A stretch of 64,000 bases of DNA, taken from positions 372,001 through 436,000 of IMG/VR virus record IMGVR_UViG_3300023179_000009; one strand, 5' to 3'. Below are positions 29,815 through 42,862 of the stretch, in pieces (positions within the stretch are counted from its first letter, which is position 1; each line of letters starts with the position of its first letter). The notes beneath the pieces were generated by a model. That model saw only the letters and a program-made list of their open reading frames with translations. It was not told where the DNA came from and made no database searches. Made by a program: the position numbers and the translations under genes.

Positions 29815-30284
29815 TTTCTGACAGTATGCAACCAATTGGGGATGTTGAGATTATTTTAGAGTGTCGAAGCGGCACCTCTGAGATTAAAAATTTTAAAAAC
29901 ACCGTTTTACTGGGTGGGAGAAGGGCTTTAGCTAAATGTTTAGCGAATCAAATAGGTGATAAATTTCAATTTAATATAGTTAATATGGTTTTTGGAGATG
30001 GGGGAACAAATAACGGTGTTAAAAAATTTGTAAATGCTGGAAGAGAAGGTTTGTTTGGCATCACAAGATTATCAAAACCAGCGTTATCGAATTTAGATAA
30101 TTCTATACCCGCTCAAGTGATATTCACATCTGTAATAAAATTCGATGAAGTAGTTGGGGTTACTTTAAACGAAATGGCTTTACAAATGGCGAATGGTCAA
30201 TTATATAGTATGGTTACATTCCCTGATTTAAATAAAACAGAGGATATGCAGCTTACATTCAACTGGAGAATTAATTTTGTTTAA
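29811..30284 (+). CDS. baseplate/tail-collar fibre-attachment protein
   Basis: KNTVLLGGRRALA, MVFGDGG, LNEMAL, F..LNKT...TFNWRINF pattern; position in the baseplate operon. Confidence 0.6.
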   Translation: MISDSMQPIGDVEIILECRSGTSEIKNFKNTVLLGGRRALAKCLANQIGDKFQFNIVNMVFGDGGTNNGVKKFVNAGREGLFGITRLSKPALSNLDNSIPAQVIFTSVIKFDEVVGVTLNEMALQMANGQLYSMVTFPDLNKTEDMQLTFNWRINFV

Positions 30285-30307
30285 ACAACAATAAAGAAGG
30301 TTTTGCA

Positions 30308-31090
30308 ATGCCAAGAATCGAACTTATACCCGAAGTTTTATACGGCCCAATGGATCCAATTCATTGGGAAATAGACAATTTGCCACTTAAAGCAATTCTA
30401 AGAAGGCAAAATTTAATCAATCTAGCTTTAGATAACGTCATTGCACAAATTCGTGACGCAATAGGAACACAAGGGAGTTTGTCGAATCGTTTAAATCAAT
30501 CAATAAATCCAGATGGTAGTTTAAAAACTGAATCTATTAATGAAACTCTCCACAGTATTGAAGATCACCAAGACACAGATCTTTATGTAAGGATGACTCG
30601 TGAAGAATCAGAGAAGTTGGCAAATATTGCCGATGAGGCAAAAAACGTTAGTTTTGAAATTTTTACTAACGAATCTTCTTTTGTTGGTTTTTCGGAAGGG
30701 GTTCTAAAAATAAAACCATCAAGCACCCTAATTCCTAGTTTTGAAGCCCCCGATGTAGTGAAATTCAATCTTAACTTCCCAGCATCCTCCGCTCATCAAC
30801 ATTATTATGGTTTAGTGCCTGTCCATGAGGATATTGTAAATCCAAATCACAAGAACTATAGAGTTGTTAGTGCGAATACTAATTTTATTGAGGGTTCGTT
30901 GCGTGTTTACATAAATGGAGTTAGAATTTTTGAAGATGATGAGGTCTATGTGCCGGGAGCGATGTTAGAAGACGCATGGACGTTACTATCGTTTACTTCA
31001 AATTCATCCGATGGTTCATTCGAACTGTCTTCTGCTATAACCGAAGATGATATTATAAGAATTGATTTTGATATATCTTTGGTTGAATAA
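30308..31090 (+). CDS. putative virion structural protein
   Basis: DNLPL..ILRR N-terminus; SLRVYINGVR...DDIIRIDF beta-domain seen in phage tail proteins. Confidence 0.55.
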   Translation: MPRIELIPEVLYGPMDPIHWEIDNLPLKAILRRQNLINLALDNVIAQIRDAIGTQGSLSNRLNQSINPDGSLKTESINETLHSIEDHQDTDLYVRMTREESEKLANIADEAKNVSFEIFTNESSFVGFSEGVLKIKPSSTLIPSFEAPDVVKFNLNFPASSAHQHYYGLVPVHEDIVNPNHKNYRVVSANTNFIEGSLRVYINGVRIFEDDEVYVPGAMLEDAWTLLSFTSNSSDGSFELSSAITEDDIIRIDFDISLVE

Positions 31091-31114: not shown

Positions 31115-31648
31115 ATGGAAGTATGTTTCTTGATTCTGAATCCTGATGGGAATTACATCGGTTTAAAGAATACAATTGGATCAATTAAATTAAGAAGTTT
31201 TAATAGAGATTATATTTGTGCTGTTGGCCAAAACACGGGTTCTAAAGAATTAAAAGAAATGAAGGAATTGTGTCCAACATTTAAAGGCAAAAATACAATA
31301 ACAAGTTTAATAAATACTGGTTTTAAAAAAATTAAAAAAGGATGGGTTTGTATTGTTTTTAGCGGAAGTAGAATTCCGGCTGGCATAGAAAAAAAATGGA
31401 GTCTTTTTTGTAAGAATGAAAACGATGTCTTGTATCCAATAGTTGAAAAAAAGTATAATTTTGTAGAAGGCTCTTTTAATGGGGTTTTAATCAACACCGA
31501 TTTTTTTAATAAATGCGGAGACTTTCCTGATCATGTTATGCAAAAACAAGGTTTAAATGATTTTGAGTTTGCAAAACTTTTGTGGTCTTTTGATGCCTTG
31601 AAAAATGGCGCTTGTTTTAAAGGAATTATTGGTATGAAGGTGATATAA
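31115..31648 (+). CDS. GT2-like fold protein, possibly degenerate
   Basis: SLINTGF...GWVCIVFSG, NGVLINTDFFNKCGDF pattern of GT-A enzymes, but no DxD. Confidence 0.4.
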   Translation: MEVCFLILNPDGNYIGLKNTIGSIKLRSFNRDYICAVGQNTGSKELKEMKELCPTFKGKNTITSLINTGFKKIKKGWVCIVFSGSRIPAGIEKKWSLFCKNENDVLYPIVEKKYNFVEGSFNGVLINTDFFNKCGDFPDHVMQKQGLNDFEFAKLLWSFDALKNGACFKGIIGMKVI

Positions 31649-31650
31649 AG

Positions 31651-32154
31651 ATGTTAGAACATAGCGGCTGGACAATAACATTAAGAAAAGAAAATGAGGA
31701 AGATACACTACTTCAGTCACCTGTTAGATCTTTTTCTTTGACTCGTGAAAACGATGATTATTCTCAAATCGCAAGCAATATAGAGGTTACGATTGATAAT
31801 TGTAACCTCTTGTTAAACGAAGGCACCTCTATGTTGGGTCAAAAATTTGACATAACCATGATTTGTGAGCCTTATGAAGGGTCTAAAAAAAATATTTTAG
31901 ACGCAACTCTTATTAGTTTGACTCACAAATTGGAAGGAACAAACATGCATGTTGTCGCAAATTGGAGTTATCTTGAAGATGAGTCTTTCCCACAAACTGT
32001 TAATGTTGATACAAGACAGATTTGGGAAGTAGCTGATTATTATACGTCTATTTCAAACTATAATATTGGTATTCAAGCGGTGTACAATGAGGGATTTATT
32101 AATTTAAACTTAGACCGGGATCAAAAAGTGAATTGGAGTCTGTTAGGGTTTTGA
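31651..32154 (+). CDS. hypothetical protein
   Basis: 167-aa ORF at the end of the operon. Confidence 0.6.
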   Translation: MLEHSGWTITLRKENEEDTLLQSPVRSFSLTRENDDYSQIASNIEVTIDNCNLLLNEGTSMLGQKFDITMICEPYEGSKKNILDATLISLTHKLEGTNMHVVANWSYLEDESFPQTVNVDTRQIWEVADYYTSISNYNIGIQAVYNEGFINLNLDRDQKVNWSLLGF

Positions 32155-32744
32155 AGTCTAATATGTTCAAGGTATTTTCTAATCAAAACCCATTTATTTG
32201 ACATTTTAACTTCACCAGAGTCTATTTTTAACAACTCTTCAACAACTTCTTCCAGGCTTCCAAAAACATTGCAGCGAGTTTGTTTTTGAGAGTCTTCTAA
32301 ATCCACAACATCATAAAGCCATCTAGGTAATTTTGATAAACCCCCATCGCACACAAAAAAACAAGGCTTGTGTTGCTGCTCTGCAAGAAAAACTTCGTTA
32401 TAAGTTCCGCACAAATGAATGTTGGGGTCTATAACAACCACAAGAAAGTCGGAAAGGTCCACAAATCTTAGGTCAAATCTTCTATATTTTGAAACATAAT
32501 CTCTTAGTTCTAAATATTTCCCTTCTTTTTGAAGTTTAACTTGATATTCCTTGTCTTCTCCTAATTTTATATCTTCGCCACCGGGTTTATTTGTTGGATC
32601 TATAAAATCAATATTTAAACCTTTATCCCAAATCATTTTCATAAATTGCCTACGCCAAGAAACCCCACTATCAGCAGCGTATTCCATTGCTCCCGAAAGG
32701 TAACAACAAGCCTGATCGAGTTTTCCCCTAGAAAGTTCATTCAT
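32121..32744 (-). CDS. nucleoside 2-deoxyribosyltransferase-like protein
   Basis: YLSGAM, WR, IDPT, DLRFVDLSD, GTYNEV motifs. Confidence 0.75.
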   Translation of the reverse strand: MNELSRGKLDQACCYLSGAMEYAADSGVSWRRQFMKMIWDKGLNIDFIDPTNKPGGEDIKLGEDKEYQVKLQKEGKYLELRDYVSKYRRFDLRFVDLSDFLVVVIDPNIHLCGTYNEVFLAEQQHKPCFFVCDGGLSKLPRWLYDVVDLEDSQKQTRCNVFGSLEEVVEELLKIDSGEVKMSNKWVLIRKYLEHIRLQNPNRLQFTF

Positions 32745-32802
32745 TTTTCAAAAACTCCTTTACTAATTTAAAGTTGTAACAATCTCTCAAATCGGAGGAT
32801 AA

Positions 32803-33513
32803 ATGTCAATAGAATTATTAGAAAAAACAAATGATTTGTTGGAAAAAGTAAAAATACCGGACAGACACACGTATTTTCAGATAGAAAAATTTATAATTGG
32901 CAAAGAGCCAACGGCACAATCTCAATTATGGGCCATTCTAAAAGAGTTGCAGTCAAGGAAAGAAACCGTCGAACAATTTCACAAAGATCTTAAGGACGCC
33001 GAGGACAACCTGGAATTATTTGATATTAAAATAGAAAGATTAAATAGGTTGATAAAAAACGAATCTTCTTCTTCAAATGTGGAGGAATCAGGGCTAAATA
33101 TTAAAGAATACGAAATAAATATAAGAAAGTTATTAAGAGAAAAAGAAAGTTTAATAAAATCTGCACAAAAACTAAACAAAAAATTAAAAGGTGTTTTGGA
33201 GGAAATGAATTGTTTATTAATTGGATATGAAAAAATTACATCAAAATATGAAGAATTAAAGGATTTAGATGACGAACAATCGCAAAAAGAAATGTGGAAT
33301 GAAAAATTGTTAGAAGAATTTAATTTAAGGTTAATACTTCAAAGACCCCTAGACCCAGATTTTGTTAGAACAGTATTGTCTCTTCACGACGAATCTACTG
33401 CAAAAAAACAAGTCGTAACTTTAATTGAAAATATTCAAAAAAAAATGATTGCTGATAGGAGTCCAAACCAACAACCTCAAGTTGAAAGCAAGCCAAAGAT
33501 CATGGCTAATTAA
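32803..33513 (+). CDS. coiled-coil hypothetical protein
   Basis: GGAGG RBS; RHTYFQIEKFIIG then long heptad repeats. Confidence 0.7.
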   Translation: MSIELLEKTNDLLEKVKIPDRHTYFQIEKFIIGKEPTAQSQLWAILKELQSRKETVEQFHKDLKDAEDNLELFDIKIERLNRLIKNESSSSNVEESGLNIKEYEINIRKLLREKESLIKSAQKLNKKLKGVLEEMNCLLIGYEKITSKYEELKDLDDEQSQKEMWNEKLLEEFNLRLILQRPLDPDFVRTVLSLHDESTAKKQVVTLIENIQKKMIADRSPNQQPQVESKPKIMAN

Positions 33514-33517
33514 AATT

Positions 33518-34540
33518 ATGGCAAAAATATCAAGTTTAGATGCGGGTTACACCACAGGGATGCTGTCTGTTTTTCCTGAGGCTTTAGATGATTTTGAATC
33601 ACTATACAGGGCCACAAATAATACCAAGATTGCTTTAAAGCAAACTTTGAATTTTAACTCTCCAAGAATTATAGTAGAGGACACAAGTGCTTTTCCTCCA
33701 AATGGAATAGTTAGAGTAGGTCCGGATGTTGGGACTTATGGCGAATATGAAATGATTTTTTATGAATACAAAACGCCTTATACTTTCGAAAAATTAAGTC
33801 GAGGCTTTGCTGGTTCAAGACAAAGAAAATGGTCCACTCAAGGAAATTATGTCACCAACTCTGTCGTGGCCGAACACCACAATGCTATAAAAGACGCTTT
33901 AATTAATATGCAAGTTAATTGTGGTTTGAAAGAATTTCCAGAGCCTGAATCTTTGAATGGAATTTTGAAATATCAAGAAACTAGATTTCTTGCTCCCAAG
34001 CCTTTGTTTCGTGCGTTTCCCATTAAAGGCCCGCCTCCCTTGAAAGTAAGATTTCAAAATTTCTCCACTGGTTGGATCGCACGATATCTTTGGGATTTTG
34101 GCGACGGATCTAATTCGTTAGAGAAAAGCCCTGTTCACGTTTACTTGAACGAGGGTATTTATAATGTAAAACTAAATGTAATAACTTCTAGTGGCGCTCA
34201 AGGCGTTGCTTCAAAAATAGGATACATAGAAGTCAATGCAGACGAGTCCATCCCGTATTTTTATGTTGATTCTATCGATAATCCTTACTCTCAAAAATAC
34301 GCAACAGAGAGGGGTCTGCAACCAAAAGAATTTATTTTTGTGGATCAGTCAGACGGGGATATAGTTCAAAGGAATTGGATTTTTGGAGATGGAACAAATT
34401 TTGCCCAGCAAGACCCGAACATACACGAAGTAAAGCACATTTATGCAAATCCTGGAGAATATGTAGTCACACAGTTAATTCAGTTTGCTAACGGTAGGAT
34501 TAAGCGTGTTGAACTACCGGAAACTTTGATAGTTTTATAA
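33518..34540 (+). CDS. PKD-domain virion/fibre protein 1
   Basis: two PKD domains (YLWDFGDG..SPVHVY...GIYNVKL; WIFGDG..HIYANPGEY); N-terminal AEHHN module. Confidence 0.8.
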   Translation: MAKISSLDAGYTTGMLSVFPEALDDFESLYRATNNTKIALKQTLNFNSPRIIVEDTSAFPPNGIVRVGPDVGTYGEYEMIFYEYKTPYTFEKLSRGFAGSRQRKWSTQGNYVTNSVVAEHHNAIKDALINMQVNCGLKEFPEPESLNGILKYQETRFLAPKPLFRAFPIKGPPPLKVRFQNFSTGWIARYLWDFGDGSNSLEKSPVHVYLNEGIYNVKLNVITSSGAQGVASKIGYIEVNADESIPYFYVDSIDNPYSQKYATERGLQPKEFIFVDQSDGDIVQRNWIFGDGTNFAQQDPNIHEVKHIYANPGEYVVTQLIQFANGRIKRVELPETLIVL

Positions 34541-34552
34541 GAAAAGAGATTT

Positions 34553-36841
34553 ATGATTCCTTATAGTTCCCTATATCCAAATGAATTTGATTCAGACAGT
34601 AATTTATTTTTAGTTCATGATTCTTTAAGAGGAATTCTTATAAACGATTACAACCCAGGGGATAAATCAATACAAGTTGATATGATTCCAGATGTTGCCA
34701 ATAGCATTCCCCCGACAGGTTTGATCACCCTTACAGAACAATGCTCTGACGTTGATGAACGTGCTGTTTCTTTTTTTTACAACACATGGGATTTTGACAC
34801 ACAAACATTCTCAGATTTAGAAATACTACCAACATTTGTTGATGTGCTTAAGCCTAAAAAAATCACAAACGTAACAGTGAACGTTATGGCTATGCATCAC
34901 AATCATTTAAAAAACGCCTTAATAGAAATTCAAAAATTTTGTGGAGTAAAAGGCACCGAGGATTTGGAACCCTTTGGTCCAACTTTAGAAGGAAGAATAA
35001 ATTTTTTAAGAAGATTGGTGCTGCAACCCAAAGCTTGGTTCACATCAAACATAAGAACCGGAAACGTTCCGCTAGAAGTCGAATTTAAAAATATGAGTTT
35101 TAGGCTGGGAACAGATGGTACCGCTGATGAGGTGAAAATTACTTGGGATTTTGGCGACCAAACGACTTCAATAATATCGGACATTTCACTTATAAGTGCG
35201 GACAGCGTTACCCCAAATAGCAACGTCAATGTTATAGTTCGTGATACAGATGGCGGCGTTATTAAAAAAACTTATTACCAGCCGGGATTGTACGATGTCA
35301 AACTAACTGTGGAGAATAATTTTGGAAAAGATGTTTGTGTTTTTGAAGATTTTATCAATGCACGTGTTAAGGCACCAGATGTTGCTGTTTTAAGATTTGT
35401 TGAGGATTCTTCTACTCAAACATCTGAGGCTGGCGTTCCTCCGAATGGACCTTTTGAAACTTTTCCAAAGATAAGATCTCCTGTTAATACTTTGATCAAT
35501 ATTGAGATAGAAAATGGAGAAAACTTTTTAGGAAATCCTGGTTTTAGTTATGGTGGCGAAAAACTAAATGAATCCGGCGCAGCCATTGATCCTATAGTTT
35601 CTTGGAGTTGGCAATTAGGAGATGACTTAACTCATCCAAATTCCCCTGTTACTAAAGCCTCTTATAGTGTTGGCGGCATATATGATTGTAAATTACGTGT
35701 TGATACCAAATTTGGGGCATACAGAATATCAAATTATGAAAACGTAATAGATGTTGTAGAAAATACAAATTTGTGGCTTTGGACCGTCCAGGACAACTTA
35801 GCTCGTGCTTATGAATATGGATTAATAAGTGAAACTTATAAATTAACGAGCAATCCAACTCTAAGTGTTTTAAGAAATCATTCGTTTTTAGATCAACACG
35901 AAGAGAATATTAGACACAAAATGAAATTCGAATTTCTTAGAAATAATGGATTTGCTCCAAGAGGCACAACGAGATCGGGTCAAAAAGGAACCTGCCTGCT
36001 GTATTGGGCAGGGGGAAGAAATTTGTCTCAACCTTCCAGCGTTGAGGAAATTAAGGTCACAGAGTTTGAGGGATTTACTGGAATTTACATATCTCGAAAT
36101 TCGATAATGAGATCTTGGAATTGGGCAAACTTAAACTCTGCCAATAAGTCTTATTTCATTTTTGGGACAAATCCTAATAATCTACCTCAATCCTCCCCGA
36201 CAAATGAAACTAAAGTTGAATTTGATTTATTAAATTTAACTTCTGCCAATTCGACAATAGAGCCTTCGATGTATTTAAATGGCGCTCAAGAACTCGGGCA
36301 AAACGTATCAATCTATGATTCTTTGGGAGAATCTGTTTATGGCGACTATAGCGTTTATAAAACGACTTGGAAAGACAATACTGGTTACATAGCAAGAAAT
36401 GATGGTGTGGGGCCTTTCTTTAGAATAAAAAGTTTCTATAGAACAGAGGGTAGCCTAGGAGAGCCGGTTAGTTTCTTGAGAAAACTTCAAGATATACAAG
36501 GCCCAACAAAAACAGAGGGGCAATTAACAAATTTAAGTTCAGGCGTTTATTTTCTAAATAACTCTGGCTCAGTGTCTAAGTTTGATCCAAACACAAGTGC
36601 CTGGACAAGCGGTGGGCCTGGAGTCAATTCGTTATTGTATAGAAATTTACAAGACACATCAGTCGTCGGTTTTGATCAGGACGCAAACTCTTTGTTGCTT
36701 GCATCAGATAGCGATAAGCGTGCTTATTTAAGTTTTGATTACAGTCCGAATGCATTTATAAAATTTAGCGAAATAGATCTTACTTTCTCTAGTTTGGGCA
36801 GCAGACCGAGTGGGGAGCAGTGGATCATGGGAGTGTTTTAA
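34553..36841 (+). CDS. PKD-domain virion/fibre protein 2
   Basis: GNVPLEVEF, TWDFGD, YYQPGLYDVKLTV, WSWQLGD; N-terminal AMHHN module; beta-rich C-terminus. Confidence 0.8.
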   Translation: MIPYSSLYPNEFDSDSNLFLVHDSLRGILINDYNPGDKSIQVDMIPDVANSIPPTGLITLTEQCSDVDERAVSFFYNTWDFDTQTFSDLEILPTFVDVLKPKKITNVTVNVMAMHHNHLKNALIEIQKFCGVKGTEDLEPFGPTLEGRINFLRRLVLQPKAWFTSNIRTGNVPLEVEFKNMSFRLGTDGTADEVKITWDFGDQTTSIISDISLISADSVTPNSNVNVIVRDTDGGVIKKTYYQPGLYDVKLTVENNFGKDVCVFEDFINARVKAPDVAVLRFVEDSSTQTSEAGVPPNGPFETFPKIRSPVNTLINIEIENGENFLGNPGFSYGGEKLNESGAAIDPIVSWSWQLGDDLTHPNSPVTKASYSVGGIYDCKLRVDTKFGAYRISNYENVIDVVENTNLWLWTVQDNLARAYEYGLISETYKLTSNPTLSVLRNHSFLDQHEENIRHKMKFEFLRNNGFAPRGTTRSGQKGTCLLYWAGGRNLSQPSSVEEIKVTEFEGFTGIYISRNSIMRSWNWANLNSANKSYFIFGTNPNNLPQSSPTNETKVEFDLLNLTSANSTIEPSMYLNGAQELGQNVSIYDSLGESVYGDYSVYKTTWKDNTGYIARNDGVGPFFRIKSFYRTEGSLGEPVSFLRKLQDIQGPTKTEGQLTNLSSGVYFLNNSGSVSKFDPNTSAWTSGGPGVNSLLYRNLQDTSVVGFDQDANSLLLASDSDKRAYLSFDYSPNAFIKFSEIDLTFSSLGSRPSGEQWIMGVF

Positions 36842-38694
36842 TGGCTTTTCCTCCAGTACCTGTTTATCCGAAGGCAATAGACAGCGACTATACGTTGTAC
36901 CTTGTTTTTGACACAACCGAAACCAGACTGTCTGTGGATAATGTTGCTTGGTCTCAAGAAATTGAAATAGTTCCTGTAGAGCCAGAGAAACCAGAGATAT
37001 GGGCAGACAATGGCTTTGCCAACATAGATGGGGAGTTGCTTTATTATGACTCAGTTGAGCGAAACTCTTATGGAAAAATTAATAAATTAAAAAATTGTGA
37101 ACGCAATTTAGGTGGAGAAAAAACAAAATTTAATAAAAAAGGAATTTGGATTAGAAGTTATGTTGTTGCCGAGCATCATAATCAATTAGTTTCTTGTGTT
37201 TTAAAAACACAAAATTTTATAGGTTACAATTTTGACCCTCGAAGAGAAACCCTTGATTGGAGAATTAGAAATTTACAAGCCTTAGAGGTAATATTCGATG
37301 ACTTTAACTGTCCTGATATAAATTTTACTTGGAATATCATAGAAAACAACCCAGTGACAGGTATTTTGGCTGAGTATTTGATAGAAATATCTCCGCCGGG
37401 AACAGTAGGTGATTTTAGATTAGATTTTGGCGATGGGAATTTTACAACTACAGAATTGTCGGGGCAACACAGATATCCGGTGAACGCAAGAGTAGATCCT
37501 GTTATACGTGTTTCCAACGAAAAGTGTCAAATTATACAAACACCAATTGAGAGAGACAATCCAGCAGAGCCGCCACCGGATGACACTCCCACTTTTGAAG
37601 TTGAAATACCAGAATTTCCAGATATTCCAGATTTTACATTTGTTCCTTGTGATGTTCCAGAGGCCGACATCAATGTTCCGCCTCTTGTTGTTCCGTGTAT
37701 ATCTATCGAGGGACAAGTTGGGCCTTTACCCTCTGTGATTATAACTGAGGGCTTGAATGTTCCGAGTATAATCACGGCGACAGGATTAACAGGTGTGCCT
37801 AGCACAATTACTGTGACAGGAGTAACAATCCCCAGTGTTATAGTTGTGGATACTCCTCCTATTCCGCCCACAATTATAATTGAACCTCCTATTCCTCCAA
37901 CAATTGTTATAGTTCCTCCGCAATCTAATATCGCTATTGATGTTGACTTCACTGAGATGCCAAGACTAGCAGTTGATTGGGGAACGCCTCCAGAGATGGA
38001 AGTCGCCATGACTTTTGCTCGTGAAGTAAAAATACCTGAAAGGTTTGCGGCAGATGAGAAGTTAATGGCAGATTTTGGTGAAGAATTTGCTGATTTGTTT
38101 GAAACCAAACAGACAATGAAAATCGAATATGAACCTGTTGGCATACCATCAGAGATACGAGTTATTTTACCAGAGGACACTAGTTTAAAACTTGATACAA
38201 GTGATTTAGACAATAAAAAAATTCAAATAGATGCAACCTCAGTTGATTTGCCCGAAAGTATTCAAATTCATGGCCCCGATAGTCCTATACCCGATTCCAT
38301 AGTTTTCGATGCTTCTGACTTCGTTCAAGCTATAGAAAGACTGCAATCATCGCCTCCAATAAAGTTGGACGCATCAGGCATACCGAAATCAATTAAGATT
38401 GATTTGGAAAAAGAAATTCCAAAAACAATAGTGGTCGAAATGCCAAACCCAATACCTGAAAAGATTGTTGTTGAAAGCCAAATACCTGATAGAATTATAT
38501 TAGAAGGTCCAGAGGGCATACCCTTAATCTTGCCAGATGAATTTGTTTTACCAGTCAAATTTCCAGACAAGATGCCTGAAGTCGAACTGGTCTGGAAGGG
38601 TAGTCCGATTGAAGTTAAGGTTACTTTGGATGAAGTTTTAGATAAAGAAGCGGATGGAAGAAACTGTGTTATGATAGTTCCTTGCAAGAAGTAA
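36841..38694 (+). CDS. PKD-like virion/fibre protein 3 with Pro/Ile/Val-rich repeats
   Basis: AEHHN module, LDFGDG, many [ILV]P-x-x-I repeats; TAATG-coupled to the previous gene. Confidence 0.75.
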   Translation: MAFPPVPVYPKAIDSDYTLYLVFDTTETRLSVDNVAWSQEIEIVPVEPEKPEIWADNGFANIDGELLYYDSVERNSYGKINKLKNCERNLGGEKTKFNKKGIWIRSYVVAEHHNQLVSCVLKTQNFIGYNFDPRRETLDWRIRNLQALEVIFDDFNCPDINFTWNIIENNPVTGILAEYLIEISPPGTVGDFRLDFGDGNFTTTELSGQHRYPVNARVDPVIRVSNEKCQIIQTPIERDNPAEPPPDDTPTFEVEIPEFPDIPDFTFVPCDVPEADINVPPLVVPCISIEGQVGPLPSVIITEGLNVPSIITATGLTGVPSTITVTGVTIPSVIVVDTPPIPPTIIIEPPIPPTIVIVPPQSNIAIDVDFTEMPRLAVDWGTPPEMEVAMTFAREVKIPERFAADEKLMADFGEEFADLFETKQTMKIEYEPVGIPSEIRVILPEDTSLKLDTSDLDNKKIQIDATSVDLPESIQIHGPDSPIPDSIVFDASDFVQAIERLQSSPPIKLDASGIPKSIKIDLEKEIPKTIVVEMPNPIPEKIVVESQIPDRIILEGPEGIPLILPDEFVLPVKFPDKMPEVELVWKGSPIEVKVTLDEVLDKEADGRNCVMIVPCKK

Positions 38695-38698
38695 AATT

Positions 38699-39556
38699 AT
38701 GTATATTAAAAAACACGATAGTGGAAATGAGTATATCTACGCCGGGGATGTTTGGGTTAGAAATTTTACCAAAAAAAAAGTATCCCCATTACAGATAACT
38801 AGTTTGTTTTCTCAAAGTGACTTTAGAAGTGTAATAGAGAACCAACAATTAAATTTAAATTTTCCCAAAATATCCGATGAAGTGTTGCAATTTGATAAAG
38901 TGGTAATAGTGTCTGATGGTTTTAAATTTGAAGAAAAACAATCTATTTTATCCAATTTACCAAAAGATGTTTGTATTCTTGCAACAAATGGAGCATTGAA
39001 TAAGTGGAAACTATTCAAAAAAGATATTGATGATGATAAAAAAAGATCAATAAACGCTTATGTTGTAAACAATCCTTTCAAAGAATGTTTTAATTATCTA
39101 CCTCCTCAAAATTCAAAATATTACCCTGTGTGTGTTGCCTCTTTAAGAACAAATCATGAGTTTTTAAAAAAATATTTAGGTGACGTTTATACTTATTGTC
39201 CAACTTCCGAAGCTGGATTTGGAATCCATGCTGCTGAGCAGTATTTTATAGATGATTATAGAAATCCAATATGTGCTTGTATAAACTTAGCTTACCAGTT
39301 CGGTGTTAAAAAATTAATGTTGTTTTGTTGTGATGACTCTTTTGAAAAATCAAGAGAACAAGCGATCCAGTTGCCGAATAAACTTTGGACTTATTCTTCG
39401 CTTTTAAGATCTCAAGATATAATTGATGCAAATTTATATTGGTTAAAAAATCAAGAAAATGAAGAAATTCAAATCGTAGACCACTCTAGCGGTGCAGATT
39501 ATAAGTATGCAACATATATACATGAAAAGGATATAACATCCTTTTTCAATGACTAA
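38699..39556 (+). CDS. DUF115/MptE/Maf-like Rossmann-fold protein
   Basis: VVIVSDG, ILATNGAL, ACINLAYQFGVKKLMLFCCD pattern. Confidence 0.5.
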   Translation: MYIKKHDSGNEYIYAGDVWVRNFTKKKVSPLQITSLFSQSDFRSVIENQQLNLNFPKISDEVLQFDKVVIVSDGFKFEEKQSILSNLPKDVCILATNGALNKWKLFKKDIDDDKKRSINAYVVNNPFKECFNYLPPQNSKYYPVCVASLRTNHEFLKKYLGDVYTYCPTSEAGFGIHAAEQYFIDDYRNPICACINLAYQFGVKKLMLFCCDDSFEKSREQAIQLPNKLWTYSSLLRSQDIIDANLYWLKNQENEEIQIVDHSSGADYKYATYIHEKDITSFFND

Positions 39557-39570
39557 TCGGAGGGATTCTG

Positions 39571-39891
39571 ATGAAAAATAAACCAATATCTTTAAACGAG
39601 TTCAAGACTTGGTTTGAAAACCAAAAAGATTTAAAAAATATTTTTAGTTTAAATCGAGACAAAATTAAAGATAACGAAAATGAAAAATTTGTTGGGTATC
39701 ATTGCGAAAGTAAAGTAAGCGAGAAAAAATTAAAAGAAAAAATAAAAACCGACGAAGACGTAGAGGGTTTAATTCGTGAGTTTTTAGAGAGTGGTGGAGT
39801 TATTACCGCTGTAGATGAAAAAAGATTTTCCATAGAAACGGACAGCGGTAGTTTTACCCTTCCTATATTTTGTGTAAAAGTTAAAAAGTAA
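39571..39891 (+). CDS. hypothetical protein
   Basis: GGAGG RBS; 106 aa. Confidence 0.7.
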   Translation: MKNKPISLNEFKTWFENQKDLKNIFSLNRDKIKDNENEKFVGYHCESKVSEKKLKEKIKTDEDVEGLIREFLESGGVITAVDEKRFSIETDSGSFTLPIFCVKVKK

Positions 39892-39928
39892 AAAAATAAA
39901 ATTACTCTTAAAAAATAACAAGCCTAGT

Positions 39929-40300
39929 TTAGAAACTGGGCTTGTTTTGTTTTTTGATCATGGTTCTTAAAGTTTTAAAAGATTTTTTAAAACTTGTATT
40001 AAAATTGTTGTGTTCAAAAGACTCAACCAAAGGATTAAAAACAGCGGGGAGATCTGTGTATCCTCTTCCTCTTAGTCTTGTTTTTAACTCATCAAAATTG
40101 TTGCAAGTTTCAATCCATAAATCATAAAGTATTTTGTTTTCTTGAATAATTTGATTTATTTTTTTTTCCGCAAAAACAGGGAGATTTAAGTCTTTAATAT
40201 CGCTAATTTTTGAAGTAACAATTGACTCACTCAAAATTGTTGTTATGACCTTTATTCCCCTTTTGTTCCTGTTTGCCAAATATAAATAAAGCTTCTTCAT
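39929..40300 (-). CDS. hypothetical protein
   Basis: 123-aa ORF filling the gap. Confidence 0.6.
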   Translation of the reverse strand: MKKLYLYLANRNKRGIKVITTILSESIVTSKISDIKDLNLPVFAEKKINQIIQENKILYDLWIETCNNFDELKTRLRGRGYTDLPAVFNPLVESFEHNNFNTSFKKSFKTLRTMIKKQNKPSF

Positions 40301-40421
40301 TCATTAAACCTTTAAATAAAATTTCTAAAAAAATTTTTGCATGTTCATCTTTTCCCCATAGATCAAAAAAATCTACGAGTTCTCTATTAACATAGTCAAT
40401 TTTTTCTTTATCTTTACTCAT
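40227..40421 (-). CDS. hypothetical small protein
   Basis: 64-aa ORF overlapping the next minus-strand gene. Confidence 0.35.
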   Translation of the reverse strand: MSKDKEKIDYVNRELVDFFDLWGKDEHAKIFLEILFKGLMNEEALFIFGKQEQKGNKGHNNNFE

Positions 40422-40432
40422 TTTTTATAGTT

Positions 40433-41035
40433 ATGATTGGTTTAACTGAATATTCTGCGTTGAAGAACGATATTTGTTTGATTTATAATGGTTGGTGTGA
40501 CGAGTATCTTTTACAATTAGATATTTTAAAGCCATTTATTGAAAAACAAAAAAATATCTCAATATTTATATCATGCCGAAATGATAAAAAAATATTATTT
40601 CCCGACAAGGATTATTTTGTGCCATCATCCGATTTAGGCAATTATAAATTTGGTTTTACTTATGAAATTACTTTTGATGGACAAAATCACCCAATTGACA
40701 ATTTCTTAAAACTATTATCAATTGATAAAATAGAAAACAAAAAAATTGAAAAAGATTCAATTACAAATCTTTGTGTTTTATTAACAAAAGGAAACTATCC
40801 AACAAAAAACTTAAATAGTGACCAAATTAATTTTTTAAATAAAATAGCCAAACAAAAAGGATATGATGTCGTTGTCGATCAAAGTATTTTCAATGCTGGG
40901 TTGGTTATGGGTGTAGAAAGTTTTGATTTATTCAAGGCTGCTAGTCTTGGAATTGAGACTTGCTTATTCGATACAGGGCTGGGTTTGAATCTCTTTAAAA
41001 AAATGTTTCCTTATTTTGAAACAATTAGTTTATAA
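40433..41035 (+). CDS. GT9-like fold protein, possibly degenerate
   Basis: YPTKNL..DQI and AGLVMGVESFDLFKAASLGIET resemble the GT9 C-terminal motif but lack its D..H. Confidence 0.4.
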   Translation: MIGLTEYSALKNDICLIYNGWCDEYLLQLDILKPFIEKQKNISIFISCRNDKKILFPDKDYFVPSSDLGNYKFGFTYEITFDGQNHPIDNFLKLLSIDKIENKKIEKDSITNLCVLLTKGNYPTKNLNSDQINFLNKIAKQKGYDVVVDQSIFNAGLVMGVESFDLFKAASLGIETCLFDTGLGLNLFKKMFPYFETISL

Positions 41036-41067
41036 AATAATATATATTATATCACAAAAGAGGCACC

Positions 41068-41634
41068 ATGTCTGTATTTAAGGTAAAATTAAACAACGGA
41101 ACTCAAGGAAAATTAGATGTAAATCCCGATACAGGGACAGCTTTTGGCGTTTCCAAACAAAGACAAATTTATGTGGCTGGCCCCAATAGAAAAATAAGGA
41201 TATTGAGCGATGGCGATGTCTTCACCGATTGCAACTATTGGAAAAGATTCACAAAAGAGTTCATGGGCGAAGAAAATGCTTTTATAGAGATAGTCAGCGA
41301 TGACGGCTCTGTTTATAGCGAAAATTCAGCGGAAAACACCTACTCGGTTGGGAACACTTTAAGCGTAACAACGTCTTTTTCTGCAACTGCTATTGATTTT
41401 ATGGATCTTTATGGTTCTCCAGCAAGGTTCTTAATGGTTCAAAATATAGATAATTCAACACCCGTAACCGGCGAATTAAATGGAAATTCTGGAGTTACAT
41501 TTATTGTCGGCCCTGGCGAGACAATGATGTTCAATCAGGGTGACGTTGTTATTACTAAATTAAGATTAAAAAGTGACTCAGGAAATCCTAGTGTTACATA
41601 TATCGCATCGGTCAGGAGTGACTGCAAAACTTGA
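41068..41634 (+). CDS. hypothetical protein, possibly virion-associated
   Basis: GAGG RBS; beta-rich 188 aa. Confidence 0.7.
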   Translation: MSVFKVKLNNGTQGKLDVNPDTGTAFGVSKQRQIYVAGPNRKIRILSDGDVFTDCNYWKRFTKEFMGEENAFIEIVSDDGSVYSENSAENTYSVGNTLSVTTSFSATAIDFMDLYGSPARFLMVQNIDNSTPVTGELNGNSGVTFIVGPGETMMFNQGDVVITKLRLKSDSGNPSVTYIASVRSDCKT

Positions 41635-41649
41635 TTTAGAAAGTTTTCA

Positions 41650-42627
41650 ATGGGGATTGTAAAAAAAAATATTAAAAATTTAAGACCAGAGAAGTTTAAG
41701 AAGAAATCTAATTTATTAAATTATTTAGAAAATAGAAATAAAATATTAATAATAAGAAGTGTTGGTGGATTGGGCGACATACTCATGCATCGAATGATGT
41801 TTGAAGATTTTAAAAATTTATCTCAAGATTTAGAAGTTCATTTTTGTTGCCCCAGTTATTATCACGACGCAATAAAAGATCACCCTTTTATTGATAAAAT
41901 TTTGGATTGTCAACAAGTTAACAAAAATGATTATGTAATTCATTATAACACATCAACTGTTTGCGGCAGAACAGAGATGGATAATTTGCCTAATAAATCG
42001 CCTCATAGAAGTGATATTTGGGCAAATTATTGTGGGGTTGAGTTAAAAAATCATGACATGCATATAAACTTGAGCGATTGGGAAAAAAACATTGCTTATG
42101 ATTTGCTAAAGTCAATCAATAAAAAATCAATCAAAAGCGTTGCAATATGCCCAATCTCAGCCATGGTGAACAAAAATTTATTGCCAAATCAAGTTTGTTT
42201 TTTAGTAGATTTCTTGAAAAAACAAAATTTGTTTCCTTTTTGTTTGCATCATAAAATTATAGATTATTGTGAAAAAAATAGAATTCCATCGATAATAGAA
42301 CCAAGAATTAGAATTTGGATGGCTATTTTGCAACAAGTTGATTATGTCATAAGTGTAGACACTGCTGCTTTTCATTGTGCTGGAGGGTTAAAAAAGCCCC
42401 TAACGGGGATTTTTAGTTTCATAGACGGAAAAGTATATGGAAAATATTTTGATTTTGTTCTGCTTCAAAAACACAAAGAAGATGACACAAATTGGACTTG
42501 CGGCCCTTGTTATGATTGGTGCAAGTGCCCAAAAACTTCTCTTAGTCCAAAGCCCTGCATAACAGATATTTCTGAAGAAATGTTAACTGGAGCAGTAAAT
42601 AGGATGCTAGAAAAATGGCCGTTATAA
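41650..42627 (+). CDS. GT9 family (heptosyltransferase-like) glycosyltransferase
   Basis: KILIIRSVGGLGDILM, HPFID, VISVDTAAFHCAGGLKKP, C-terminal CGPC...C...PC. Confidence 0.82.
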   Translation: MGIVKKNIKNLRPEKFKKKSNLLNYLENRNKILIIRSVGGLGDILMHRMMFEDFKNLSQDLEVHFCCPSYYHDAIKDHPFIDKILDCQQVNKNDYVIHYNTSTVCGRTEMDNLPNKSPHRSDIWANYCGVELKNHDMHINLSDWEKNIAYDLLKSINKKSIKSVAICPISAMVNKNLLPNQVCFLVDFLKKQNLFPFCLHHKIIDYCEKNRIPSIIEPRIRIWMAILQQVDYVISVDTAAFHCAGGLKKPLTGIFSFIDGKVYGKYFDFVLLQKHKEDDTNWTCGPCYDWCKCPKTSLSPKPCITDISEEMLTGAVNRMLEKWPL

Positions 42628-42649
42628 ACTATATTAAATAAGGGTTGTT

Positions 42650-42862
42650 ATGCCTCAACTCATAAAACCGAGCACAAAAGTAAAAATTATTCCTAAAGAT
42701 GGAGAGATTGAGATTACTCTTAATATAAACATAAATCTTGATGGAAAAGTTTCTGCTATTGCGGACAATGCTGATGTTTTGGTTGATGAAGAAGAAAAAG
42801 TTCCTCATATTATTCCGGATTTTTCTTCGGGTTTAAAATTAAATTTTGGGAAAAATGCATGA
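42650..42862 (+). CDS. small hypothetical protein
   Basis: 70 aa; preceded by an ACTATATTA box. Confidence 0.6.
   Translation: MPQLIKPSTKVKIIPKDGEIEITLNININLDGKVSAIADNADVLVDEEEKVPHIIPDFSSGLKLNFGKNA

What the first reader, a model, noticed from the sequence alone, without database searches (positions are those of the whole stretch)
31115..42627. Glycosyltransferase-fold genes interleaved with tail-fibre genes, several apparently catalytically eroded
Seen: around the PKD fibre genes lie a GT2-like ORF with no DxD (31115), a DUF115/Maf-like ORF (38699), a GT9-like ORF lacking the D..H motif (40433) and an intact-looking GT9 (41650). A weak sulfotransferase-like ORF lies near the portal (62870). 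Inference: either a virion or fibre glycosylation pathway, or repeated exaptation of sugar-binding enzyme folds as structural or chaperone subunits, paralleling the altered CCA enzyme.
Basis: inference. Interest (0 to 1): 0.6.

Follow-up and report, generated by a model that had tools for sequence, protein, structure and literature searches.

The report
Glycosyltransferase genes within huge-phage fibre module
A 459-kb freshwater phage keeps four sugar-transferase-type genes inside its baseplate and tail-fibre gene block: two look like working enzymes and two are degenerate copies, one of which is predicted to bind the working enzyme next to it, which suggests the phage puts sugars on its own fibre proteins.

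Summary
The four glycosyltransferase (GT)-type ORFs are real. 31115 has a GT-A/GT2 fold (Z 17.3) with the DxD metal site replaced by Ser-Gly-Ser. 38699 is MptE-like/Maf-like. 40433 is a 200-aa compact GT9-like GT-B with the family's His lost. 41650 is a GT9 with all signature residues invariant. The 62870 "sulfotransferase" is not supported.

The genes sit between baseplate and PKD-domain genes. Their order is kept in related huge-phage contigs with proteins only 30-60% identical.

New here:
- 40433 is predicted to bind the neighbouring GT9 41650 (ipSAE 0.81; best control 0.09) through its N-lobe.
- In two distant relatives the 40433 orthologue is reduced to that N-lobe alone.
- One relative carries extra GT9 and GT2-GT9 genes at the same spot.
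- The phage has at least 12 other GT2 genes but none of the heptose or nonulosonate/Kdo donor-pathway families searched for.

Best reading (0.42): a late-expressed protein O-glycosylation set for fibre or baseplate proteins that uses host nucleotide sugars, with a catalytic GT9 and a non-catalytic GT9-derived partner, much like GtfA/GtfB. No glycan or acceptor protein has been shown. Host envelope remodelling is the main rival. This is a new variant of a known kind.

The parts
26710..29814 (+). Baseplate protein of P2 gpI type (1034 aa). It marks the upstream edge of the baseplate and fibre block.
   Evidence: Pfam Tail_P2_I E 1e-5, above the cut-off. Gp25 (24713) and a gpV-type hub (22388) lie upstream.
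29811..30284 (+). Small protein resembling the N-terminus of tail-collar fibre proteins.
   Evidence: Pfam Phage_tail_fib E 1e-3, below the cut-off. PHROG 5417 E 1.3e-10; tail-collar fibre and baseplate wedge PHROGs match weakly.
30308..31090 (+). Conserved 260-aa protein of unknown fold, immediately upstream of the GT-A-like gene. The two genes abut or overlap by up to 4 bases in several relatives.
   Evidence: Homologues at 40-95% identity in L003-L009 and L011. Their ends abut or overlap the 31115 homologue.
31115..31648 (+). GT2-derived GT-A-fold protein (177 aa) that has lost the DxD metal site. Probably a pseudo-glycosyltransferase.
   Evidence: Model pLDDT 92.5. VIA Z 17.3 to GT2 structures. 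hhalign to the phage's own GT2 paralogues gives 84.9%. No invariant Asp, Glu or His in 43 sequences; G84 is invariant at the DxD position. The family has 223 proteins, all unnamed.
32121..32744 (-). Conserved antisense gene, nucleoside 2-deoxyribosyltransferase-like / YtoQ-like (207 aa).
   Evidence: Pfam Nuc_deoxyrib_tr E 5e-3, below the cut-off. The family profile hits YtoQ 8of6 at E 4.6e-3. Syntenic in all relatives.
32803..33513 (+). Conserved 236-aa protein of unknown function, immediately upstream of the first PKD gene.
   Evidence: Syntenic in all relatives. No significant family match.
33449..34540 (+). PKD-domain fibre or baseplate-appendage protein. By comparison with relatives (331-346 aa) the true start is probably the internal ATG near 33518.
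   Evidence: Pfam PKD_4 E 2.4e-23, two domains. Homologue lengths.
34553..36841 (+). Second PKD-domain fibre-type protein (762 aa).
   Evidence: Pfam PKD_4 E 2.2e-12. 42-97% identity in relatives.
36820..38694 (+). Third large protein of the fibre block (624 aa), no known family.
   Evidence: Syntenic and variable, 28-97% identity. No Pfam or PHROG hit.
38699..39556 (+). MptE-like/DUF115 protein whose nearest structural neighbours are Maf (flagellin nonulosonic-acid) glycosyltransferases.
   Evidence: Pfam E 5.8e-5, below the cut-off. Atlas structure TM 0.73-0.74 to Maf clusters. Many invariant polar residues: D73, N97, N124, N125, D185, D186, R188, D212, D213, E216. Single copy in the genome.
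39571..39891 (+). Small conserved protein (106 aa), unknown function.
   Evidence: Syntenic in all relatives.
39929..40300 (-). Small conserved antisense gene (123 aa). The gap between 39571 and this gene is an insertion hot spot in relatives.
   Evidence: Synteny. At this spot L005 carries an aldehyde dehydrogenase, a GT9 and a GT2-GT9 fusion, and L004 carries a TnpB-like gene.
40433..41035 (+). Compact GT9-like GT-B protein (200 aa). Predicted non-catalytic partner of the GT9 at 41650.
   Evidence: Model pLDDT 91.5. The top four VIA hits are all GT9, Z 9.1-8.6. Atlas TM 0.60-0.70 to GT9 clusters. F167 replaces the GT9 His. Predicted complex with 41650 scores 0.81 against a best control of 0.09. 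N-lobe-only orthologues occur in L001 and L011.
41068..41634 (+). Core protein of this phage clade (188 aa, 19% Ser+Thr), always directly upstream of the GT9. Candidate acceptor or structural protein.
   Evidence: At least 1318 relatives, all unnamed. Present in every locus. Composition. No PDB or family match.
41650..42627 (+). GT9 glycosyltransferase with intact signature residues and an invariant four-Cys cluster. Probably the catalytic subunit.
   Evidence: Invariant D43, K175, D237, H242, C284, C287, C293, C303.
42650..42862 (+). Small conserved protein (70 aa) that closes the block before a homing-endonuclease insertion.
   Evidence: Syntenic in relatives.

Best explanation
The block 31115-42627 is a conserved glycosylation set built into the baseplate and fibre module of a freshwater huge phage.

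Shown by computation:
- It contains one GT9 with every signature residue intact (41650).
- It contains one MptE-like/Maf-like protein with an enzyme-like set of invariant polar residues (38699).
- It contains two GT-derived proteins that have lost canonical catalytic features. 31115 is a GT2 fold without the DxD site. 40433 is a compact GT9-like protein without the His.
- 40433 is predicted to bind the N-lobe and N-terminal extension of 41650 through its own N-lobe.
- In two distant lineages only that N-lobe survives, so the donor-binding C-lobe is dispensable.

Inferred:
- 41650 plus 40433 form a two-subunit enzyme. The GT9 transfers the sugar and the degenerate paralogue stabilises it or presents the acceptor, as GtfB does for GtfA.
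- The acceptors are proteins made from the same late transcription unit: the PKD-domain fibre proteins and/or the core protein 41068 that always sits between the two subunit genes.
- The donors are host nucleotide sugars, because none of the heptose, nonulosonate/Kdo or general sugar-activation families searched for was found in the phage. ADP-heptose for the GT9 and a CMP-activated acid sugar for the Maf-like enzyme are the family defaults.
- 31115 acts as a non-catalytic sugar- or protein-binding helper, a pseudo-GT chaperone or assembly factor. It may work with the tightly adjoining 30308 product.
For: - Folds and motifs.
- Tight same-strand packing with structural genes, with gaps of 2-32 bases.
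- Gene order kept in 10 further distinct relatives down to about 30% identity.
- Predicted 40433-41650 complex: ipSAE 0.81, 0.82 and 0.81 against a best control of 0.09. The mark was reached by 58 of 80 solved complexes and 2 of 110 mismatched pairs. Partner pLDDT is at least 90, and the runs share at least 72% of contacts.
- The predicted interface on 40433 includes near-invariant Y7, K11 and Y14. Its columns are more conserved than the family average, 0.66 against 0.53.
- The orthologues in L001 and L011 cover only HMM positions 1-101 and 1-83, with no room or signal for a C-lobe.
- A relative (L005) carries a bona fide GT9 and a GT2-GT9 fusion at the same hot spot. This matches adhesin glycosylation loci where the priming pair is constant and extension GTs vary (PMC6973325).
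- The only characterised Maf enzymes O-glycosylate a filament protein, flagellin (bioRxiv 10.1101/2020.06.03.131540). GT9 includes protein heptosyltransferases that act on adhesins (PMC4358343).
- No NeuB, CTP_transf_3, SIS_2 or NTP_transferase family was found in the 91%-complete genome.
Against: - No glycan, acceptor protein or enzyme activity has been shown.
- GT9 enzymes are mostly LPS-core enzymes. This genome carries at least 12 other GT2 genes, three further weak GT9-like hits, three sugar epimerase/dehydratases and sulfotransferases. GT genes are therefore common in it, and some may serve host-surface remodelling.
- 41650 and 38699 both score below Pfam's curated cut-offs.
- The complex prediction used my own unpaired alignments. 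Because 40433 is a GT9 relative, the prediction could echo a GT9 homodimer mode.
- The catalytic residues of 38699 could not be mapped onto Maf.
- 31115 is missing from its syntenic place in L012/L013.
- No RNA run holds the region.
Confidence: 0.42

Rival explanations
1. Host envelope remodelling. The GT9, the Maf-like enzyme and their helpers act on host LPS core, capsule or another lipid-linked glycan during infection. This would block superinfection or stop progeny from sticking to debris. On this reading the genes sit in the late module only because of when they are expressed.
For: GT9 is chiefly an LPS heptosyltransferase family. TIGR02193 and TIGR02195 are the best NCBIfam matches and WaaC/WaaF are structural neighbours. 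The genome is very rich in GT2, epimerase/dehydratase and sulfotransferase genes elsewhere. Jumbo-phage GT clusters have been proposed to diversify host outer polysaccharides (PMC7824862).
Against: The position inside the fibre block is strictly conserved across deep divergence, whereas accessory genes around it come and go. Characterised Maf-type enzymes have protein acceptors. A targeting partner reduced to an acceptor-side lobe fits a protein substrate better than a lipid one. No membrane anchors or flippase/polymerase genes were seen in the block.
Confidence: 0.25
2. Pure exaptation. None of the four proteins transfers sugar. All serve as fibre assembly chaperones, adaptors or minor virion components that only retain GT folds.
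For: 31115 has lost DxD and has no invariant carboxylate. 40433 has lost the His and, in two lineages, the whole C-lobe. Tail-fibre genes are often followed by dedicated chaperone genes (established knowledge). None of the donor-pathway families searched for is encoded.
Against: 41650 keeps every GT9 signature residue invariant at 42-94% identity. 38699 keeps a dense set of invariant Asp, Asn and Arg residues typical of an active site. A relative adds Pfam-significant GT9 and GT2-GT9 genes at the same site.
Confidence: 0.12
3. No functional link. The phage is simply GT-rich, and four GT-type genes happen to lie among fibre genes. They might act on other targets such as DNA or small molecules.
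For: Roughly 20 GT-type genes occur in 459 kb. Virus GTs that modify DNA are well known (cited in PMC12619734).
Against: The expected number in 11.5 kb at the genome-wide density is about 0.5, and four are observed. 31115, 38699 and 40433 are single-copy families kept in place in distant relatives. GT9 and Maf-type families are not known DNA glycosyltransferases. 40433 is predicted to pair with its neighbour gene product.
Confidence: 0.08

Closest known systems
GtfA-GtfB priming complex for serine-rich-repeat adhesins (Gram-positive bacteria)
   Same: An active GT-B enzyme is paired with a GT-derived, non-catalytic partner that handles the acceptor. The genes sit beside the adhesin genes. The priming pair is constant while the number of additional GT genes varies between strains (PMC6973325). 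Compare the extra GT9 and GT2-GT9 genes in L005.
   Different: GtfA/B are about 500 aa, belong to another GT-B family, and interact through DUF1975. Here the pair is a GT9 plus a 200-aa (or 100-aa) GT9-like protein with N-lobe to N-lobe contact that is predicted only. The setting is a phage structural module. No accessory Sec system is present.
Bacterial autotransporter heptosyltransferases (TibC, AAH), GT9-related
   Same: TibC is the best structural match of 40433. These enzymes O-glycosylate an adhesin encoded next to them, using host ADP-heptose. TibC has a four-Cys metal knuckle in the C-lobe (PMC4358343). 41650 has four invariant Cys near its C-terminus.
   Different: 41650 has no TibC-type N-terminal beta-barrel and no sequence match to TibC at E <= 1. 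The Cys spacing differs: C-x2-C-x5-C-x9-C here against Cys339/342/358/370 in TibC. A dodecamer is not indicated.
Maf flagellin nonulosonic-acid glycosyltransferases (PF01973 central domain)
   Same: 38699 matches the same Pfam domain weakly, and the Atlas's model of it superposes on Maf clusters. Maf enzymes O-glycosylate Ser/Thr of a filament protein from CMP-activated acid sugars, including Kdo (bioRxiv 10.1101/2020.06.03.131540).
   Different: 38699 is only 285 aa and has no Maf_flag10_N match. The Maf catalytic residues (E324/D415 in M. magneticum Maf) could not be mapped. The phage has no NeuB or CMP-sugar synthetase. PF01973 also covers archaeal pterin pyrophosphokinases.
Mycobacteriophage virion glycosylation; giant-virus capsid and fibril glycosylation
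   Same: Virus-encoded GTs decorate the virion's own proteins. Glycans on mycobacteriophage capsid and tail-tube subunits are described in PMC12619734, citing Freeman et al. 2023. The chlorovirus and mimivirus cases rest on my own knowledge.
   Different: Those systems use GT2/GT4-type enzymes on capsid or tube proteins. A GT9 plus a degenerate GT9 partner plus a Maf-like enzyme inside a fibre module is not described there. Nothing has been measured here.
LPS-core heptosyltransferases WaaC/WaaF (GT9)
   Same: Same family signatures: an N-terminal Gly-rich loop ending in the catalytic Asp, a Lys, and a D-(S/T)-x3-H motif.
   Different: Scores lie far below the equivalog cut-offs, 29.8 against 185 bits. 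41650 has a 30-residue N-terminal extension that forms part of the predicted partner interface. The gene context is viral and structural.
Pseudo-glycosyltransferase helpers such as Cosmc (GT31-derived chaperone of T-synthase) and CHPF in chondroitin synthase complexes
   Same: These are GT-A-fold proteins that have lost catalytic residues and serve as a chaperone or stabilising partner. A CHSY3-CHPF complex is among the Foldseek hits of 31115. The Cosmc comparison rests on my own knowledge.
   Different: No partner of 31115 has been identified or tested. The resemblance is functional analogy only.

Membership tests
GT9 (Glyco_transf_9) - ORF 41650 | Sequence match above the curated family threshold | tested here: not met
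   Pfam PF01075 scores 17.3 bits against a cut-off of 22, over residues 224-256 only. TIGR02193 scores 29.8 against 185 bits. Most members of its Atlas cluster (82%) do carry PF01075.
GT9 (Glyco_transf_9) - ORF 41650 | GT-B two-lobe fold superposable on GT9 structures | tested here: met
   The Atlas's own model (pTM 0.86) aligns at TM 0.89 and 0.77 to GT9 clusters. The profile aligns both lobes to GT9 3tov. I did not fold this protein myself.
GT9 (Glyco_transf_9) - ORF 41650 | Catalytic and donor-binding signature: N-lobe Gly-rich loop ending in Asp, C-lobe Lys, D-(S/T)-x3-H | tested here: met
   G39-G40-L41-G42-D43, K175, D237-T238 and H242 are invariant in 8 sequences of 42-94% identity. They align to the same motifs of 3tov and WaaC.
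GT9 (Glyco_transf_9) - ORF 41650 | Transfer of heptose from ADP-heptose | not testable with these tools
   Needs an enzyme assay.
GT9 - ORF 40433 | GT9-type GT-B fold | tested here: met
   TibC, 3tov, WaaF and WaaC are ranks 1-4 of 48,161 chains: Z 9.1-8.6, 179-187 residues aligned, rmsd 4.3-4.6. Foldseek to TibC gives E 1.3e-4. Atlas GT9 clusters align at TM 0.60-0.70. These Z values are only modestly above the background level.
GT9 - ORF 40433 | Sequence membership | tested here: not met
   No Pfam, NCBIfam or PDB-sequence match. hhalign to the 41650 family gives only 7.7-19% probability, although the alignment is collinear.
GT9 - ORF 40433 | D-(S/T)-x3-H motif and a conserved donor-binding C-lobe | tested here: not met
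   The positions read E162...F167. The Lys equivalent is not conserved. The whole C-lobe is absent from the orthologues in L001 and L011.
GT2 / GT-A - ORF 31115 | GT-A fold and homology to GT2 | tested here: met
   Z 17.3, rmsd 2.9 over 167 residues. hhalign to the phage's own GT2 paralogues gives 84.9%, E 6.4e-6. GT2-like N67 and G135-x-F-x-D/E motifs are kept.
GT2 / GT-A - ORF 31115 | DxD (or equivalent) metal- and diphosphate-binding motif at the end of beta-4 | tested here: not met
   The aligned positions are F82-S83-G84. In the family, position 83 is Glu in 44% of members and otherwise Ala, Gly or Ser; G84 is invariant; position 85 is Ser or Thr.
GT2 / GT-A - ORF 31115 | Catalytic base (Asp of the ED motif) conserved | tested here: inconclusive
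   D149 is present in the window protein. Only 51% of family members are acidic at this position, and the region is gapped and less confident (pLDDT 65).
GT2 / GT-A - ORF 31115 | Pfam GT2 family match | tested here: not met
   No Pfam hit at E <= 0.1. It is not among the 15 PF00535 matches in the genome.
MptE-like / Maf (PF01973) - ORF 38699 | Domain match above the curated threshold | tested here: inconclusive
   23.4 bits against a cut-off of 34.6, but nearly the full profile is covered, positions 4-169 of 171. In the nearest Atlas clusters 11-37% of members carry PF01973.
MptE-like / Maf (PF01973) - ORF 38699 | Modified GT-A (GT42-like) fold as in Maf | tested here: met
   The Atlas's model aligns at TM 0.73-0.74 to clusters named Maf glycosyltransferase. 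It was not checked against solved structures. The family profile finds no PDB sequence.
MptE-like / Maf (PF01973) - ORF 38699 | Maf catalytic residues and flagellin-binding flanking domains | not tested
   No alignment to a characterised Maf could be obtained. No Maf_flag10_N match was seen. The protein is 285 aa, against 390-550 aa for the Maf clusters.
Bacterial autotransporter heptosyltransferases (TibC type) - ORF 41650 | N-terminal beta-barrel, beta-hairpin thumb and iron finger | tested here: not met
   No TibC sequence match at E <= 1. There is no TibC_1st domain, and the catalytic Asp is already at residue 43. Four invariant Cys exist, but with a different spacing from TibC (PMC4358343).
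GtfA/GtfB two-protein glycosyltransferase | Interaction through the DUF1975 domain; GT4-type GT-B subunits | tested here: not met
   No such domains in either ORF. The comparison is of mechanism only.

The most novel reading that the evidence does not exclude
Huge phages of this clade carry a previously undescribed two-subunit GT9 enzyme. A catalytic subunit is paired with a paralogue that has been whittled down, in some lineages to a bare 100-residue acceptor-side lobe, and acts as a targeting or activating subunit. Together with a Maf-like enzyme it coats tail-fibre or baseplate proteins with LPS-core-type sugars (heptose, Kdo or related acid sugars) taken from host precursor pools. Lineage-specific extra GTs would diversify the glycan. 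This would be a virion glycocalyx that tunes adsorption or hides fibres from host or grazer recognition.
Probability: 0.15. Interest if true: 0.8.

Novelty: new variant of a known kind. Interest (0 to 1): 0.55.

Why it matters
Virion glycosylation in tailed phages has so far been documented mainly for mycobacteriophage capsid and tail-tube proteins. If the fibres of a widespread freshwater huge-phage clade are glycosylated by a phage-encoded GT9 and Maf-like set, protein glycosylation would bear on phage host recognition and virion stability.

The finding would also give a compact model of how a glycosyltransferase paralogue decays into a regulatory or targeting subunit, with natural intermediates of 200 aa (two lobes) and 100 aa (one lobe).

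It also assigns folds to three large unnamed protein families (223, 67 and more than 1300 members for two of them and the neighbouring core protein). The predicted 40433-41650 complex is a direct, cheap biochemical test.

Tried and rejected
Searches that gave nothing:
- PHROGs gave no hit for any of the ten ORFs between 31115 and 42627.
- NCBIfam named only the GT9.
- Profile searches of PDB sequences found nothing useful for the 40433, 31115, 38699 and 41068 families.
- No RNA-seq run holds the region. Contigs cannot show expression.
- The Freeman et al. 2023 paper is not held. It is cited only through PMC12619734.

Readings rejected:
- The 62870 "sulfotransferase" has no support.
- A TibC-type (BAHT) identity for 41650 was considered and rejected. 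There is no beta-barrel, no sequence match and a different Cys spacing.
- A cytidylyltransferase reading of 31115 was considered, because KdsB and IspD appear low in its fold lists. It was rejected because GT2 structures score higher and GT2 sequence motifs are retained.
- I first thought 40433 was absent from L001 and L011. This was a threshold artefact. Half-length orthologues are there.
- The 2705-aa protein at 11750 was checked as a possible mucin-like acceptor. It looks like a Gly/Ala-rich tape-measure protein instead.

Donor pathways searched for in the genome and not found: NeuB, CTP_transf_3, SIS_2/GmhA and NTP_transferase.

Not attempted:
- The large representative-protein search was not run.
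- No alternative genetic code was needed.
- Residue-level structural superposition was not possible, because model coordinates are not exposed. Catalytic positions were mapped by profile alignment and secondary-structure order.

Full report
**What the window is.** The window is bases 372001-436000 of a 458,813-base IMG/VR virus record, estimated 91% complete. The only GenBank phage with a match is the 595-kb uncultured phage LR756511.1, at 35-39% protein identity. Near-identical DNA occurs in several independent freshwater and lake metagenomes. Standard code 11 gives closely packed ORFs, so no other genetic code was used.

The region of the finding lies at the end of a contractile-tail module. 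In order it holds:
- a 2705-aa Gly/Ala-rich tape-measure-like protein (11750);
- a gpV-type hub (22388) and gp25 (24713);
- a P2 gpI-type baseplate protein (26710) and a tail-collar-fibre-like protein (29811);
- two PKD-domain proteins (33449, 34553) and a 624-aa protein (36820).

**Checking the four ORFs.** Family scans alone leave them weak or blank. Pfam gives 38699 a sub-threshold MptE-like match and 41650 a sub-threshold GT9 match. It gives 31115 and 40433 nothing. PHROGs gives nothing.

I collected relatives with one scan of viral contigs, aligned each family, deepened two alignments with the word search, and folded the two blank ORFs.

*31115.* The model has pLDDT 92.5 and is a GT-A fold. 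Foldseek gives E 1e-7 to WrtF, SpsA, TarP and others. VIA gives Z 17.3, rmsd 2.9 over 167 of 177 residues. Viral GT2 proteins are its neighbours in BFVD.

A profile alignment to ten Pfam-significant GT2 paralogues of the same genome gives 84.9% probability. It places their D-A-D opposite F82-S83-G84. In 43 family members G84 is invariant and position 83 is Glu in only 44%. No Asp, Glu or His is invariant anywhere in the family.

GT2 hallmarks that do not bind metal survive: N67 and the G135-x-F-x-D/E stretch. The Asp of the ED base motif is present in the window protein but in only half the family.

*40433.* The model has pLDDT 91.5 and shows two small Rossmann-like lobes. The four best of 48,161 PDB representatives are all GT9: TibC Z 9.1, 3tov 8.9, WaaF 8.7, WaaC 8.6. 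Foldseek agrees, and Atlas GT9 clusters align at TM 0.60-0.70.

Profile alignment to the neighbouring GT9 family is weak (7.7-19%) but collinear. It pairs D23/E24 with the catalytic Asp43, E162 with D237, and F167 with H242. E24, H86 and E162 are conserved in 52-53 of 53 sequences. The protein is therefore altered rather than simply decayed.

*41650.* It keeps G-G-L-G-D43, K175, D237-T238 and H242, plus four Cys (284, 287, 293, 303), all invariant. It aligns to GT9 3tov and WaaC and matches TIGR02193 at E 3.3e-7. In the Atlas its feature score is 0.98 and TM is 0.89/0.77 to GT9 clusters.

*38699.* The Atlas's model of it aligns at TM 0.73-0.74 to Maf glycosyltransferase clusters. Its family has many invariant Asp, Asn and Arg residues.

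*62870.* This ORF lies on the minus strand and has no sulfotransferase signal. Sulfotransferase-family hits exist elsewhere in the genome.

**Linkage to fibre genes.** The following order is kept in LR756511 and in ten further loci (nine distinct sequences):

29811 - 30308 - 31115 - 32121(-) - 32803 - PKD - PKD - 36820 - 38699 - 39571 - 39929(-) - 40433 - 41068 - 41650 - 42650 - actin-like gene

Protein identities run from 95% down to about 30%. One more contig, for which no DNA could be fetched, shows the same order of gene sizes and Pfam labels.

Mobile or accessory genes come and go around this order: the GIY-YIG endonuclease at 42859, ORF 31651, and a TnpB-like gene in L004. 31115 is in place in eight distinct loci. 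It is not covered in L010 and is missing from its syntenic place in L012/L013. The three unusual families are single-copy in the genome.

The genome as a whole is GT-rich. It has 12 PF00535 matches above the cut-off, three further weak GT9-like hits besides 41650, and three sugar epimerase/dehydratases. At that density about 0.5 GT-type genes are expected in 11.5 kb, and four are found.

**New evidence on how it works.**

First, a complex prediction of 41650 with 40433 passed its controls. ipSAE was 0.81, 0.82 and 0.81 against a best control of 0.09. The mark was reached by 58 of 80 solved complexes and 2 of 110 mismatched pairs. Partner pLDDT was at least 90, and the runs agreed in at least 72% of contacts.

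The tool's own caveats apply. The result supports binding but does not show it. My own unpaired alignments were used. A GT9 relative could echo a homodimer mode.

The interface joins the N-lobe of 40433 (residues 2-14, 40-42, 74-77, 94-95) to the N-terminal extension and N-lobe of the GT9 (residues 22-32, 54-61, 96-99, 128-131). On 40433 it includes near-invariant Y7, K11 and Y14.

Second, the apparent absence of 40433 from LR756511 and L011 was a threshold artefact. Both carry an orthologue of about 100 aa at the same position. It covers only HMM positions 1-101 and 1-83, which is the N-lobe. The next gene starts 17-49 bases downstream, and no C-lobe signal appears in any frame.

In GT-B enzymes the C-lobe binds the nucleotide-sugar donor and the N-lobe mostly binds the acceptor (established knowledge). 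So the part this family cannot lose is the part predicted to touch the GT9, not the donor site.

Third, in L005/L006 the gap between the 39571 and 39929 homologues holds an aldehyde dehydrogenase, a GT9 above the Pfam cut-off, and a GT2-GT9 fusion. The site therefore behaves as a glycosylation islet with lineage-specific additions.

Fourth, the genome shows no match to the NeuB, CMP-sugar synthetase, GmhA-type isomerase or sugar-1-phosphate nucleotidyltransferase families. Donors must come from the host, perhaps trimmed by the phage's dehydratases and epimerases. One of these, of GDP-mannose-4,6-dehydratase type, lies at window 2208-3266.

**Interpretation.** The most economical reading is a late-expressed protein glycosylation set.
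- A catalytic GT9 (41650) has a GT9-derived non-catalytic partner (40433).
- A Maf-like transferase (38699) acts alongside it.
- A GT2-derived helper (31115) has lost its metal site.
- They act on products of the same module.

Candidate acceptors are the PKD proteins, 36820, and 41068. The last is a 19% Ser/Thr core protein with more than 1300 relatives, always wedged between the two GT9-type genes.

The logic parallels three known systems:
- TibC/TibA (PMC4358343).
- Maf/flagellin (bioRxiv 10.1101/2020.06.03.131540).

Membership in those specific families is not claimed. DUF1975, the TibC beta-barrel and the Maf flanking domains are all absent.

None of this shows a glycan. Remodelling of the host envelope is a serious rival, given what GT9 usually does and the proposal for jumbo-phage GT clusters in PMC7824862. 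A purely structural role for all four proteins is less likely, because 41650 and 38699 look catalytically intact and a relative adds bona fide GTs at the site.

**Verdict.** Novelty: a new variant of a known kind. Virus-encoded virion or adhesin glycosylation with a pseudo-GT partner is known in principle. This GT9 / mini-GT9 / Maf-like arrangement in a huge-phage fibre module, and the one-lobe remnants, are not described in the literature I could search.

Noticed in passing
window 43617-44630 (+): An actin-like protein matches Pfam Volactin (E 4.8e-69) directly downstream of the glycosyltransferase block. It is the most conserved gene of the neighbourhood, 58-99% identical in relatives, and always follows the GT9 and the 70-aa gene.
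   Followed up: partly
window 42859-43626 (+): A GIY-YIG/NUMOD3 homing endonuclease is inserted between the 70-aa gene and the actin-like gene. It is present in L003 and L012 but missing or fragmentary in other relatives, so it is a mobile insertion.
   Followed up: partly
L005 11782-15845 (-) and L004 11345-12490 (+): The gap between the homologues of 39571 and 39929 is an insertion hot spot. L005/L006 carry an aldehyde dehydrogenase, a GT9 and a GT2-GT9 fusion there. L004 carries a TnpB/Cas12f-like gene.
   Followed up: yes
window 32121-32744 (-): A conserved antisense gene inside the plus-strand fibre block. It matches nucleoside 2-deoxyribosyltransferase weakly and, as a family profile, YtoQ (8of6, E 4.6e-3). 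Its function in a structural module is unexplained.
   Followed up: partly
window 2208-4828 (+): A GDP-mannose-4,6-dehydratase/epimerase gene (E 1e-42) is followed by two ORFs with faint GT2 signals (E about 0.007-0.009). This is a second sugar-related cluster at the start of the window, next to an M14 carboxypeptidase.
   Followed up: no
whole genome G000 (outside the window): The genome has an unusually large glycan toolkit: 12 PF00535 GT2 matches above the cut-off (clusters near 143 kb and 236-250 kb), three further weak GT9-like ORFs, three NAD-dependent epimerase/dehydratases, and sulfotransferase-family hits near 77.7, 230.9 and 451.5 kb.
   Followed up: partly
window 62387-62908 (+): A 2H-phosphoesterase matches the anti-CBASS protein Acb1 (E 1e-8, above the cut-off).
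   Followed up: no
window 63388-63999 (+, runs off the window): This ORF has an intein splicing-domain signal (E 2.5e-6, below the cut-off) just after the terminase region.
   Followed up: no
window 44638-45129 (+): This 163-aa protein is a tandem duplication of a roughly 76-aa unit. The unit is a single-copy gene in LR756511, L008, L010 and L011.
   Followed up: no
window 6772-8262 (-): A 496-aa protein has a PolyA_pol head domain (CCA-adding / poly(A) polymerase type, E 2.9e-16). No connection to the glycosyltransferase block was seen.
   Followed up: no
window 41650-42627, residues 284-303: Four invariant cysteines (C-x2-C-x5-C-x9-C) lie near the C-terminus of the GT9. They may form a metal knuckle in a position comparable to TibC's iron finger, but with different spacing.
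   Followed up: partly
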